DNA of 16,770 bases from Octopus sinensis (lineage: Eukaryota), in contig NW_021825279.1 of assembly GCF_006345805.1 (NCBI RefSeq), positions 1 through 16,770 of the forward strand, read 5' to 3'. Every line of letters begins with the position of its first letter. Position 1 is the stretch's first letter. This document shows positions 3,383 through 4,166 of this stretch, piece by piece. The position numbers were made by a program, and so were the translations under genes. Below the pieces are notes generated by a model that did not search any database, had not been told where the DNA came from, and saw only the letters and a program-made list of their open reading frames with translations.

Positions 3383-3623
3383 GGCGAGCTGGCAGAATGG
3401 TTAGCACACTAGACGAAATGCATAGCCGTATTTCGTCTGCCGTTACGTTCTGAGTTCAAATTCTGCCGAGGTCGACTTTGCCTTTCATCCTTTCGGGGTC
3501 GATAAATTAAGTACCAGTTACGTACTGGGGTCGATTTAATCGATAATCGATTTAATCCGTTTGTCTGTTCTTGTTTGTCCCCTCTGTGTTTAGCCCCTCG
3601 TGGGTAATAAAGAAATAGGTATT
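3383..3623 (+). mobile_element. tRNA-derived SINE, family A
   Basis: Head GGCGAGCTGGCAGAA, B-box-like GAGTTCAAATTC, tail AAAGAAATAGGT. Flanked by a 16-bp TSD GGTAT(C/T)TATTCCAGCT at 3367-3382 and 3618-3633. Confidence 0.9.
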
Positions 3624-3648
3624 TATTCCAGCTTTTGACAGTGAAGCT

Positions 3649-3749
3649 GTCAGAATGGCCGAGTGGTCTAAGGCGCCAGGTACGTTAACCAGAACATTGA
3701 GTACTCTGGTCCACGAACGTGGGCGTGGGCTCGAATCCCACTTTTGGCA
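3649..3749 (+). pseudogene. Intron-containing tRNA-Leu(CAA) pseudogene with a destroyed anticodon loop
   Basis: 5' GTCAGAATGGCCGAGTGGTCTAAGGCGCCAG and 3' GTGGGCTCGAATCCCACTTTTGGCA match eukaryotic tRNA-Leu(CAA). Acceptor stem GTCAGAA/TTTTGGC has two G:U pairs; anticodon stem CCAGG/TCTGG; long variable arm CCAC-GAAC-GTGG; T stem GTGGG/CCCAC. T54 is C. The expected loop CTCAAG reads TACG. An extra ~19-nt intron is present. Confidence 0.88.
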
Positions 3750-3760
3750 GATAACGTTTG

Positions 3761-3999
3761 GGTGGCGAGCTGGCAGAAACGTTAGCACGCCGGGCGAAAT
3801 GCGTAGCCGTATTTCGGCTGCCGTTACTTTCTGAGTTCAAATTCCGCCGAGGTCGACTTTGCCTTTCATCCTTTCGGGGTCGATTAAATAAGTACCAGTT
3901 ACGCACTGGGGTCGATATAATCGACTTAATCCGTTTGTCTGTCCTTGTTTGTCCTCTCTGTGTTTAAGCCCCTTGTGGGGTAGTAAAGAAATAGGTATT
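3761..3999 (+). mobile_element. tRNA-derived SINE, family A, directly downstream of the tRNA pseudogene
   Basis: Full head GGTGGCGAGCTGGCAGAAACG through tail AAAGAAATAGGT; CpGs are largely intact. Confidence 0.92.
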
Positions 4000-4166
4000 T
4001 ATTCCAGCTTTTTGTACGTTCTGAGTTCAAATTCCGCTGAGATCAACTTCGTCTTTCATCACTTCGATGTCGATATAATAAAGTACCAGAGAAGTACTGG
4101 GATCGATGATTTCGACTGTTCCTCTATATAAAAATTTAAAAAAGGTGGCTTTGTACCAAATTCGGA

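What the first reader, a model, noticed from the sequence alone, without database searches (positions are those of the whole stretch)
3618..4012. Unspliced pre-tRNA-Leu fused to a SINE and apparently retroposed as one unit into a re-used target site
Seen directly: a perfect 19-bp direct repeat GGTATTTATTCCAGCTTTT (3618-3636 and 3994-4012) encloses a 12-nt leader (GACAGTGAAGCT), an intron-retaining tRNA-Leu with no CCA, a 10-nt trailer ending in only three T (GATAACGTTT), and a full SINE. The same target sequence occurs a third time at 3367-3382, inside an older SINE. The two young SINEs differ at many positions, so this is not a simple tandem duplication. Inference: leader, intron and trailer are the anatomy of a primary Pol III transcript. 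The unit arose either by read-through of a weak terminator into a downstream SINE, or by RT template switching from SINE RNA to a pre-tRNA oligo(U) end, analogous to U6-L1 chimeras. This is the route by which new tRNA-headed or dimeric SINE families could be born, and I am not aware of it being described in cephalopods.
Basis: partly seen in the sequence, partly recalled or inferred. Interest (0 to 1): 0.75.

Follow-up and report, generated by a model that had tools for sequence, protein, structure and literature searches.

The report
Pre-tRNA-Leu fused to octopus SINE
Inside an old octopus SINE sits a single retroposed unit made of an unspliced but anticodon-less tRNA-Leu(CAA) copy joined end to end to a full-length SINE, next to a second, independent SINE at the same target site; it is a clean single-locus example of a known process, not a new kind of element.

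Summary
The 19-bp repeat is exact at 3618-3636 and 3994-4012, and a 15/16 copy lies at 3367-3382. All three are native sequence of an older SINE that becomes continuous once 3383-4012 is removed.

The repeats enclose a 12-nt leader, a tRNA, the trailer GATAACGTTT and a full-length SINE. No separate duplication flanks either part, so they entered as one unit.

The tRNA is Leu(CAA)-type. Its first 31 nt are identical to fish tRNA-Leu(CAA) genes, and it carries a homologous-looking 24-nt intron and no CCA. However, it lacks exactly the 7 nt ACTCAAG, so it has no anticodon. It also has a T4 run in its acceptor stem. It is a dead copy.

'GGGT' is not filler. It is the SINE's own 5' end, so the junction is oligo-T to SINE nucleotide 1.

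The two young SINEs belong to different subfamilies, so they are independent insertions and not a duplication.

Template switching and co-transcription from a contiguous parent cannot be separated, because no cephalopod genome was searchable. No second copy of the composite was found.

This is a new example of a known kind (chimeric retrocopy, SINE head acquisition). Interest is moderate.

The parts
3320..3366 (+). Older, diverged SINE: 5' part up to the target site
   Evidence: When rejoined to 3994-4140 it aligns without a break to related SINE copies at 3105-3300 and 4155-4300 and to the young-SINE consensus. The start coordinate is approximate.
3367..3382 (+). T1: first copy of the target site, GGTATcTATTCCAGCT (upstream duplication of SINE A)
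   Evidence: Read directly. It matches T2 at 15 of 16 positions. Relatives of the old SINE have T at the mismatch position, so the C is derived.
3383..3617 (+). SINE A, a young-family copy that lacks the 3-nt GGC 5' prefix and carries a private 7-nt internal duplication
   Evidence: BLAST and alignment. It has 6 private events. Its subfamily states are GATAAATTAAG / CCCCTCTG / GTAATAAAG.
3618..3636 (+). T2: downstream duplication of SINE A (first 16 nt) and upstream duplication of the composite (19 nt); ends in T4
   Evidence: Exact 19-mer. T-run at 3633-3636.
3637..3648 (+). 12-nt leader GACAGTGAAGCT upstream of tRNA position 1
   Evidence: Read directly. The length and the first-base purine fit a Pol III start site; this is an inference, since the parent gene was not available.
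3649..3749 (+). tRNA-Leu(CAA)-type pseudogene with a long variable arm, no CCA and no anticodon loop
   Evidence: Rfam tRNA, 37.4 bits against a gathering score of 29. The first 31 nt are identical to Cirrhinus molitorella tRNA-Leu(CAA) genes. The A box TGGCCGAGTGG is intact. The B box reads GGCTCGAATCC, with C at position 54. There are two G-U pairs in the acceptor stem (drawing).
3680..3703 (+). Intron-like insert GTACGTTAACCAGAACATTGAGTA; the missing 7 nt (ACTCAAG) would lie between 3679 and 3680
   Evidence: Fish Leu(CAA) introns begin GTATTTCAACC and end GTTGTTGAGAT. The TTGAGT in the insert is complementary to ACTCAA. Adding ACTCAAG back makes ARAGORN call an intron-containing tRNA at default settings.
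3742..3745 (+). T4 run inside the 3' acceptor strand (canonical sequence TTCT)
   Evidence: It is a potential Pol III stop signal upstream of the SINE.
3750..3759 (+). Trailer GATAACGTTT, ending in T3 exactly at the junction
   Evidence: Read directly.
3760..3993 (+). SINE B, full length including its 5' prefix (GGC read as GGT, a CpG-to-TpG change); the first nucleotide is 3760 or 3761
   Evidence: Eight of eight octopus copies have GGC or CGC directly before GGCGAG. SINE B shares 4 diagnostic states with an O. vulgaris copy that A, D and E lack. It has about 4 private events and no T run of 4 or more inside.
3994..4012 (+). T3: downstream duplication of the composite; with T4013 it forms a T5 run
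4013..4140 (+). Older SINE: 3' part
   Evidence: The end coordinate is approximate.

Best explanation
This is one target-primed reverse transcription event. Reverse transcriptase of the SINE's LINE partner copied a full-length SINE RNA to its first nucleotide. It then jumped end to end onto the oligo(U) 3' end of a nuclear, unspliced, untrimmed pre-tRNA-Leu(CAA) and copied that to its 5' leader. The chimeric cDNA was integrated into a site inside an older SINE and duplicated 16-19 bp of target. A second SINE, from a different subfamily, was inserted independently at the same first-strand nick; the order of the two events is unresolved.

Shown: single-unit insertion, independence of the two SINEs, precursor-like tRNA anatomy, and a precise junction between T3 and SINE nucleotide 1.

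Inferred: the template jump itself, and that the 7-nt loss of the anticodon loop arose in the source RNA or gene, during reverse transcription, or afterwards.

The present copy is inert as a tRNA. It is probably a poor Pol III unit for transcribing the whole composite.
For: - Exact 19-bp duplications bound the composite. The best repeat around SINE B alone is 5 nt, and there is no copy of the target between trailer and SINE. This excludes two-step assembly in place.
- The target is native old-SINE sequence, and the old SINE is continuous once the inserts are removed.
- Other copies of the family have ordinary 8-17-bp duplications at the same 3' end...AAAGAAATA.
- The tRNA is upstream and in the same orientation. 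It carries a leader, an intron homologue, no CCA and a trailer ending in TTT.
- SINE B starts at the family's true 5' end, the GGC prefix, with 0-1 extra nucleotides. This is what an end-to-end jump predicts.
- A and B differ at 20 of 206 sites, share no private states, and B carries subfamily markers shared with an O. vulgaris copy.
- Precedent: the same jump, from SINE RNA to a tRNA during TPRT, has been proposed for PittSINE (PMC5729268). Chimeric retrocopies show a preference for small RNAs (PMC4758252, citing Buzdin 2003). L1-mediated pre-tRNA retropseudogenes are reported in human (PMC4476161, citing Schmitz 2004).
Against: - The parent tRNA-Leu gene could not be retrieved, so a parent locus with the tRNA and SINE already contiguous is not excluded.
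- A T-run at a 5' junction is not specific. The composite's own 5' junction also follows TTTT.
- The T2 end plus leader reads TTTTGACAG. This allows microhomology-mediated 5' truncation of a longer RNA, in which case the 12-nt 'leader' says nothing about a Pol III start.
- This is a single locus.
- The primate tRNA/L1 chimeras described so far are mostly half-tRNAs in antisense orientation (bioRxiv 10.1101/2025.02.02.635956), unlike this one.
Confidence: 0.45

Rival explanations
1. Co-transcription of a contiguous parent. Elsewhere in the genome a SINE sits directly after the T3 of a tRNA-Leu(CAA) gene or pseudogene. Pol III read-through, or a longer host transcript, spans both. The SINE tail recruits the LINE machinery, and the whole RNA is retroposed here as one unit.
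For: - It shares the single pair of duplications and the same orientation with the best explanation.
- TTT is too short to stop Pol III, and SINE B has no internal T run of 4 or more.
- SINEs make up 11.6% of the O. vulgaris genome (PMC13282606), so some tRNA genes should have a SINE within a few bases.
- TTTT at the 5' junction fits 5' truncation of a longer RNA.
Against: - It needs a parent in which a full-length SINE begins exactly after the trailer's T-run.
- A highly expressed read-through source would be expected to leave several copies. None was seen in the window, in about 98 kb of other octopus DNA, or among 15 SINE-derived predicted proteins. This is weak evidence, given the small sample.
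Confidence: 0.33
2. DNA-level origin. The tRNA+SINE block, or SINE A+T2, was placed here by tandem duplication, unequal crossing-over, gene conversion or filler capture at a break, and not by retroposition of a chimeric RNA.
For: A 29-bp identity (SINE tail plus target) flanks the block at 3608-3636 and 3984-4012. This could support unequal exchange.
Against: - A and B are no closer to each other than to unlinked copies, and they belong to different subfamilies.
- The staggered-cut signature is exact and lies at the SINE's normal 3' end.
- The block's ends coincide with a plausible transcript start and a SINE terminus, not with arbitrary points.
- Any exchange model still needs two independent insertions at the same site.
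Confidence: 0.08
3. Two separate retropositions. A tailless pre-tRNA retropseudogene inserted first, and SINE B later landed exactly at its 3' end (or the reverse order).
For: Tailless tRNA and pre-tRNA retropseudogenes exist in mammals (PMC5322556, PMC4476161). This site has clearly been hit more than once.
Against: A second event would leave its own duplication between the trailer and SINE B. None is present, and the best match is 5 nt.
Confidence: 0.04
4. Assembly artefact. A mis-join between repeats created the arrangement.
For: The region is SINE-dense and rich in simple repeats. Gaps inside SINEs occur in another octopus assembly.
Against: All junctions are biologically precise (duplications, and the SINE's 5' and 3' termini). 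The shared repeats of 19-29 bp are too short to mislead a long-read assembly. The tRNA unit is unique sequence.
Confidence: 0.03

Closest known systems
Chimeric retrocopies made by LINE reverse-transcriptase template switching (U6/L1, U3/L1, 5S/L1, tRNA/L1; Buzdin 2002/2003 as cited in PMC5729268 and PMC4758252; bioRxiv 10.1101/2025.02.02.635956)
   Same: A small Pol III RNA sits at the 5' side, the retroelement at the 3' side, and one pair of 9-19-bp duplications surrounds both. The small RNA is joined at its natural oligo(U) 3' end.
   Different: The 3' partner here is a full-length SINE, not a 5'-truncated L1, and the machinery is a non-L1 octopus LINE partner that was not identified. The tRNA is whole, in sense orientation and unprocessed (leader, intron, trailer). 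Primate tRNA/L1 chimeras are mostly antisense half-tRNAs.
SINE head replacement or acquisition by template switching (PittSINE from TguSINE1 plus tRNA-Asp, PMC5729268; module exchange in molluscan SINEs, PMC4758252 and PMC4824008)
   Same: The proposed step is the same: a jump from SINE RNA to a tRNA during TPRT, giving a tRNA-headed element flanked by a duplication.
   Different: Those cases are inferred from amplified families in which the old head was replaced. Here the whole SINE is kept, giving a dimeric layout. The acceptor is a precursor with an intron, and only one copy is known.
Pre-tRNA and tailless tRNA retropseudogenes of mammals (Schmitz et al. 2004, as cited in PMC4476161; PMC5322556)
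   Same: An unprocessed nuclear tRNA precursor was used as a reverse-transcription template and is flanked by duplications.
   Different: Those elements stand alone and are primed directly on the tRNA. Here the tRNA is carried behind a SINE, whose tail supplied the priming end.
Dimeric or compound SINE families (such as Alu-type dimers and tRNA-tRNA dimers; own knowledge, and PMC13023118 for a recent dimeric SINE)
   Same: The layout is two Pol III-type modules in tandem, with the 5' module carrying A and B boxes.
   Different: There is no evidence of amplification. A T4 inside the 5' module is likely to stop Pol III before the second module.

Membership tests
Chimeric retrocopy by template switching | Two unrelated transcripts joined in the same orientation, with the retroelement at the 3' side | tested here: met
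   The tRNA-Leu-type unit (3637-3759) lies upstream of SINE B (3760-3993), both on the + strand.
Chimeric retrocopy by template switching | One pair of target-site duplications around the whole chimera and none around either part | tested here: met
   The 19/19 repeat. The best repeat around SINE B alone is 5 nt.
Chimeric retrocopy by template switching | The junction lies at the natural 3' end of the acceptor RNA and at the point the RT reached on the donor | tested here: met
   The trailer ends in TTT and is followed at once by the SINE's true 5' prefix. This is also compatible with a contiguous parent.
Chimeric retrocopy by template switching | The two source genes are not adjacent in the genome | not testable with these tools
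   No cephalopod genome was searchable. The intron 21-mer and the SINE 30-mer are absent from all three DNA collections.
Functional tRNA gene | Cloverleaf reaching the Rfam gathering score | tested here: met
   37.4 bits against 29.
Functional tRNA gene | Seven-base anticodon loop with U33 and an anticodon | tested here: not met
   ACTCAAG is absent between 3679 and 3680. ARAGORN at default settings finds no gene.
Functional tRNA gene | Terminator of 4 or more T shortly downstream, and none inside the gene | tested here: not met
   Only T3 in the trailer. A T4 lies inside the acceptor strand at 3742-3745.
Copy of a tRNA-Leu(CAA) precursor or gene | Body matches Leu(CAA) genes | tested here: met
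   31 of 31 identity in the 5' exon, plus the TCTGG anticodon-stem strand, the T stem and the long variable arm, against fish Leu(CAA) genes.
Copy of a tRNA-Leu(CAA) precursor or gene | Intron at position 37/38 | tested here: inconclusive
   A 24-nt insert resembles the fish intron at both ends and is complementary to ACTCAA. However, positions 31-37 are missing, so the splice-site position cannot be read.
Copy of a tRNA-Leu(CAA) precursor or gene | Leader and trailer identical to those of a parent gene | not testable with these tools
   The parent gene was not retrievable.
Octopus tRNA-derived SINE family | Many dispersed copies with their own duplications; present in Octopus genomes | tested here: met
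   Five copies in the window. Copies in O. vulgaris and O. bimaculoides.
Octopus tRNA-derived SINE family | 3' tail shared with a partner LINE | not tested
   No LINE was examined.
Amplified dimeric (tRNA-Leu-headed) SINE family | More than one copy of the same composite at different loci | tested here: not met
   The unit 3637-3764 is unique in the window and absent from about 98 kb of octopus DNA. None of 15 related predicted proteins crosses the junction. The genome-wide count could not be tested.
Tandem duplication of one SINE | The two copies are each other's closest relatives | tested here: not met
   A-B distance is 9.7%, against 6.8% for A-C and 7.8% for B-E. A and B share no private states and belong to different subfamilies.

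The most novel reading that the evidence does not exclude
Octopus SINE RNAs may home to the 3' end of resident SINE copies, which would explain the exact re-use of the nick. Their reverse transcriptase may also routinely make end-to-end jumps onto nascent nuclear Pol III transcripts. On this reading the locus is one member, or the founder, of an undescribed tRNA-Leu-headed compound SINE lineage, and the 7-nt loss at the exon-intron border records a jump across a splicing intermediate.
Probability: 0.07. Interest if true: 0.6.

Novelty: new member of a known kind. Interest (0 to 1): 0.4.

Why it matters
SINE families are thought to gain new heads when the reverse transcriptase jumps from a SINE RNA onto a small RNA. 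That step is almost always inferred long afterwards, from amplified families. This locus preserves the raw product, with both termini, both duplications and the junction intact. The acceptor is marked as a nuclear precursor by its leader, intron and trailer.

That makes two questions testable in cephalopods, where SINEs make up roughly a tenth of the genome:
- where in the cell the machinery meets its templates
- how often template jumps happen compared with read-through.

The value is as a worked example and as a search image for a genome-wide count. The locus is not a new mechanism.

Tried and rejected
- **Searching for the parent gene or other copies.** Exact scans for the intron 21-mer and for a 30-nt invariant SINE core found nothing in the metagenome, viral and prokaryote-genome collections. 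Those collections hold no cephalopod DNA.
- **Protein route.** ORFs spanning the tRNA and the junction gave no hits. A SINE ORF reached O. vulgaris. A full phmmer scan gave 15 hits, all to the SINE part only, except a fish tRNA-Leu(CAA) array, which I used as comparator.
- **Orthologous or empty site.** Ten window ORFs are not in the protein collection, so I could fetch no orthologous or empty site.
- **Literature search by sequence string.** It found only an unrelated paper. Schmitz 2004 is not held.
- **Rejected: functional tRNA gene.** It has no anticodon and is nested in a SINE.
- **Rejected: tandem duplication of A and B.** They belong to different subfamilies.
- **Rejected: 'GGGT' as non-templated filler.** It is the SINE's own prefix.
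- **Rejected: Arg-ACG.** ARAGORN makes this call only at relaxed thresholds.
- **Rejected: Rfam miRNA hits in the window.** They are simple-repeat matches far below the gathering scores.
- **Not significant: MFE folding of the unit.** The z-score is -1.16.
- **Unresolved: order of the A and composite insertions.** A has 6 private events and B has 4.

Full report
**1. Observation**

The 19-mer GGTATTTATTCCAGCTTTT occurs exactly twice, at 3618-3636 and 3994-4012. None of 200 dinucleotide shuffles gave three matches at up to 3 mismatches. A third copy at 3367-3382 reads GGTATcTATTCCAGCT.

Between the two exact copies lie, in order:
- GACAGTGAAGCT (3637-3648)
- a tRNA (3649-3749)
- GATAACGTTT (3750-3759)
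- a SINE that ends ...AAAGAAATA at 3993.

Rfam's tRNA model scores the tRNA at 37.4 bits, above its gathering score of 29. No CCA follows the discriminator A at 3749. The stated coordinates are correct.

**2. Context**

The target is native sequence of an older, diverged SINE. Joining 3300-3366 to 3994-4140 gives a sequence that aligns without interruption to two related old copies (3105-3300 and 4155-4300) and to the young-family consensus. Everything from 3383 to 3993 is therefore inserted. The layout is:

T1 | SINE A (3383-3617) | T2 | leader-tRNA-trailer | SINE B | T3

The window holds five copies of the young family: A, B, C (4338-4551, minus strand), D (7527-7725, minus strand) and E (8084-8312, minus strand). 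C, D and E have their own duplications of 8-17 bp.

A SINE-encoded ORF matched a hypothetical protein of Octopus vulgaris at 94% identity. The locus it led to (L001) carries a copy 95% identical to the window consensus. Octopus bimaculoides DNA (L003, 76 kb) holds many related heads. The window is therefore from an Octopus species. The species itself was not determined.

**3. The two young SINEs are independent**

A and B differ at 20 of 206 shared columns. That is as far apart as unlinked copies are (A-C 14, B-E 16), and A and B share no private state. B shares four diagnostic states with the O. vulgaris copy that A, D and E lack: GATTAAATAAG, CCTCTCTG and GTAGTAAAG. They come from different source subfamilies, so this is not a tandem duplication.

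Private changes number about 6 events in A and 4 in B. T1 carries one derived mismatch. The order of the two insertions cannot be settled, and either order gives the observed arrangement.

**4. The tRNA**

A full phmmer scan with the reverse-strand ORF 3685-3906 returned 15 proteins. Fourteen of them cover only the SINE part. The exception comes from a tandem array of intron-containing tRNA-Leu(CAA) genes in the fish Cirrhinus molitorella. I used this array as an empirical comparator.

The fish gene and the window copy read as follows:
- Fish: GTCAGAATGGCCGAGTGGTCTAAGGCGCCAG ACTCAAG GTATTTCAACC...GTTGTTGAGAT TTCTGG...
- Window: the same first 31 nt, then directly GTACGTTAACCAGAACATTGAGTA C TCTGG.

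The body is therefore Leu(CAA)-type. The 24-nt insert resembles the fish intron at both ends, and its TTGAGT is complementary to ACTCAA. Exactly the 7 nt ACTCAAG are missing: position 31 plus the anticodon loop up to the 5' splice site.

ARAGORN finds no gene at default settings, even with introns allowed. Restoring the 7 nt in silico makes it call an intron-containing tRNA. This check is partly circular and is offered only as consistency.

The copy departs from the canonical sequence in three further ways:
- C at position 54 of the T loop.
- Two G-U pairs in the acceptor stem.
- A T4 run at 3742-3745 where the canonical sequence is TTCT.

It is a pseudogene copy of a gene or precursor, not of a mature tRNA.

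**5. The junction**

In eight of eight octopus copies, the head GGCGAGCTGG is directly preceded by GGC or CGC. The 'GGGT' at 3760-3763 is therefore SINE B's own 5' prefix, with a CpG-to-TpG change, and not filler. The junction is trailer ...GTTT | SINE nucleotide 1, with at most one extra base. SINE B is full length.

**6. Single-unit insertion**

No copy of the target lies between trailer and SINE B. The best repeat bracketing SINE B alone is 5 nt. This excludes a tRNA retropseudogene and a SINE arriving separately.

A staggered-cut duplication placed exactly at the family's normal 3' terminus points to target-primed reverse transcription of one chimeric RNA or cDNA.

**7. Mechanism**

Two RNA-level routes fit.

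(a) Template switching. The reverse transcriptase finishes the SINE RNA and jumps to the UUU-3' end of a nascent pre-tRNA. This predicts exactly the end-to-end junction seen, and a full-length donor. It has direct precedent: PittSINE (PMC5729268), molluscan SINE module exchange (PMC4758252, PMC4824008) and L1-mediated pre-tRNA retropseudogenes (PMC4476161).

(b) Co-transcription from a parent locus where a SINE sits directly behind the tRNA. TTT does not stop Pol III, and SINE B has no internal T4. The composite's own 5' junction also follows TTTT, so a T-run at a junction is not diagnostic. It could also mark microhomology-mediated 5' truncation of a longer RNA.

Without the parent gene I rate (a) at about 0.45 and (b) at about 0.33. 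DNA-level models (0.08) still need two hits at one site, and the subfamily difference and exact termini argue against them.

**8. Site re-use**

Four of the five window copies have duplications that begin with GGT. Copies in O. vulgaris and O. bimaculoides begin with AGT and with A. A link between the first bases of the duplication and the 3' end of the RNA is known for other SINE/LINE pairs (PMC6007223).

SINEs make up 11.6% of the O. vulgaris genome (PMC13282606). Assuming about 1.6 million copies in about 2.8 Gb (my own rough estimate), the chance that a given insertion re-uses a resident SINE's nick is 0.06% with no preference. It rises to 2-4% if a GGT start were obligatory. This is uncommon but not extraordinary across a genome scan.

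Head-to-tail SINE arrays also occur in O. bimaculoides. This leaves room for tail-guided insertion, which I did not test.

**9. Potential as a new SINE**

The A box is intact and a T5 follows T3. However, the T4 inside the acceptor strand should stop much Pol III transcription before the SINE. No second copy was found in the window, in about 98 kb of other octopus DNA, or among related predicted proteins. That sample is far too small to exclude a low-copy family.

**10. Verdict**

The reading 'one retroposed unit with precursor anatomy at a re-used site' is supported, with three corrections:
- The tRNA has no anticodon.
- GGGT is part of the SINE.
- The general mechanism is already the accepted model.

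This is a new, unusually legible example of a known kind.

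Noticed in passing
window 3367, 3618, 3994, 7527-region, 8084-region: Four of the five young-SINE copies in the window have target-site duplications that begin with GGT (A, B, D: GGTTGCCGACG; E: GGTGCTGG). 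Copy C begins TCATATATATATAAG, and the O. vulgaris and O. bimaculoides copies begin AGT and A. This suggests a preference or microhomology at the priming site.
   Followed up: partly
L003 66040-66620 (O. bimaculoides CM046612.1), minus strand: Three copies of a related SINE, with a different 3' tail ending AAGAATATA, lie head to tail. The second and third abut directly, and the first and second are 12 nt apart. Tandem SINE arrays may be common in octopus genomes.
   Followed up: no
L003, several loci (e.g. 12924-13085, 58542-58671, 69443-69604): Most O. bimaculoides hits match only positions 1-163 of the young-SINE consensus. The head and core are therefore shared by families with different 3' tails, which fits modular SINE evolution.
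   Followed up: no
window 3633-3641 and 3742-3750: The end of T2 plus the start of the leader reads TTTTGACAG, close to the tRNA's own 3' end TTTTGGCAG. The leader's GACAG is also complementary to CTGTC spanning positions -2 to +3. This is either coincidence or microhomology at the 5' junction.
   Followed up: no
window 3536-3552: SINE A carries a private 7-nt internal duplication (TTAATCG) that is absent from all other copies.
   Followed up: partly
window 2496-3112: A minisatellite of about 23 units of 27 bp, open in one frame as a TTTSPTAAY-like repeat (208-aa ORF at 2457-3083). It lies directly upstream of the SINE cluster.
   Followed up: no
window 13174-13552 and 14066-14443: A direct duplication of about 380 bp, 94-100% identical, with copies spaced 891-892 bp apart. 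This looks like a recent local tandem duplication.
   Followed up: no
window 1251-1402 and 10694-10845: A 152-bp direct repeat at 90% identity, 9.4 kb apart, probably another interspersed repeat family.
   Followed up: no
window 1700-2100, 5820-5920, 6500-7020, 12300-12930, 13560-13820, 15890-16310: Long simple-sequence tracts of (TA)n, (TG)n, (TCTG/TCTA/TCCA)n and (TTCC)n-like repeats. They produce dozens of Rfam 'mir-297/466/3149' matches, all far below the gathering scores, which are false positives.
   Followed up: yes
L002 (Cirrhinus molitorella CM082399.1), whole 20.9 kb: A dense tandem array of about 250-bp units, each holding an intron-containing tRNA-Leu(CAA) gene. It is annotated as a hypothetical protein. 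Some units carry internal deletions, and ARAGORN mislabels many as Glu-CTC with an intron.
   Followed up: partly
L003 40785-40797: An assembly gap (a run of N) lies inside a SINE copy and duplicates part of it. SINE-rich octopus assemblies contain local artefacts.
   Followed up: no
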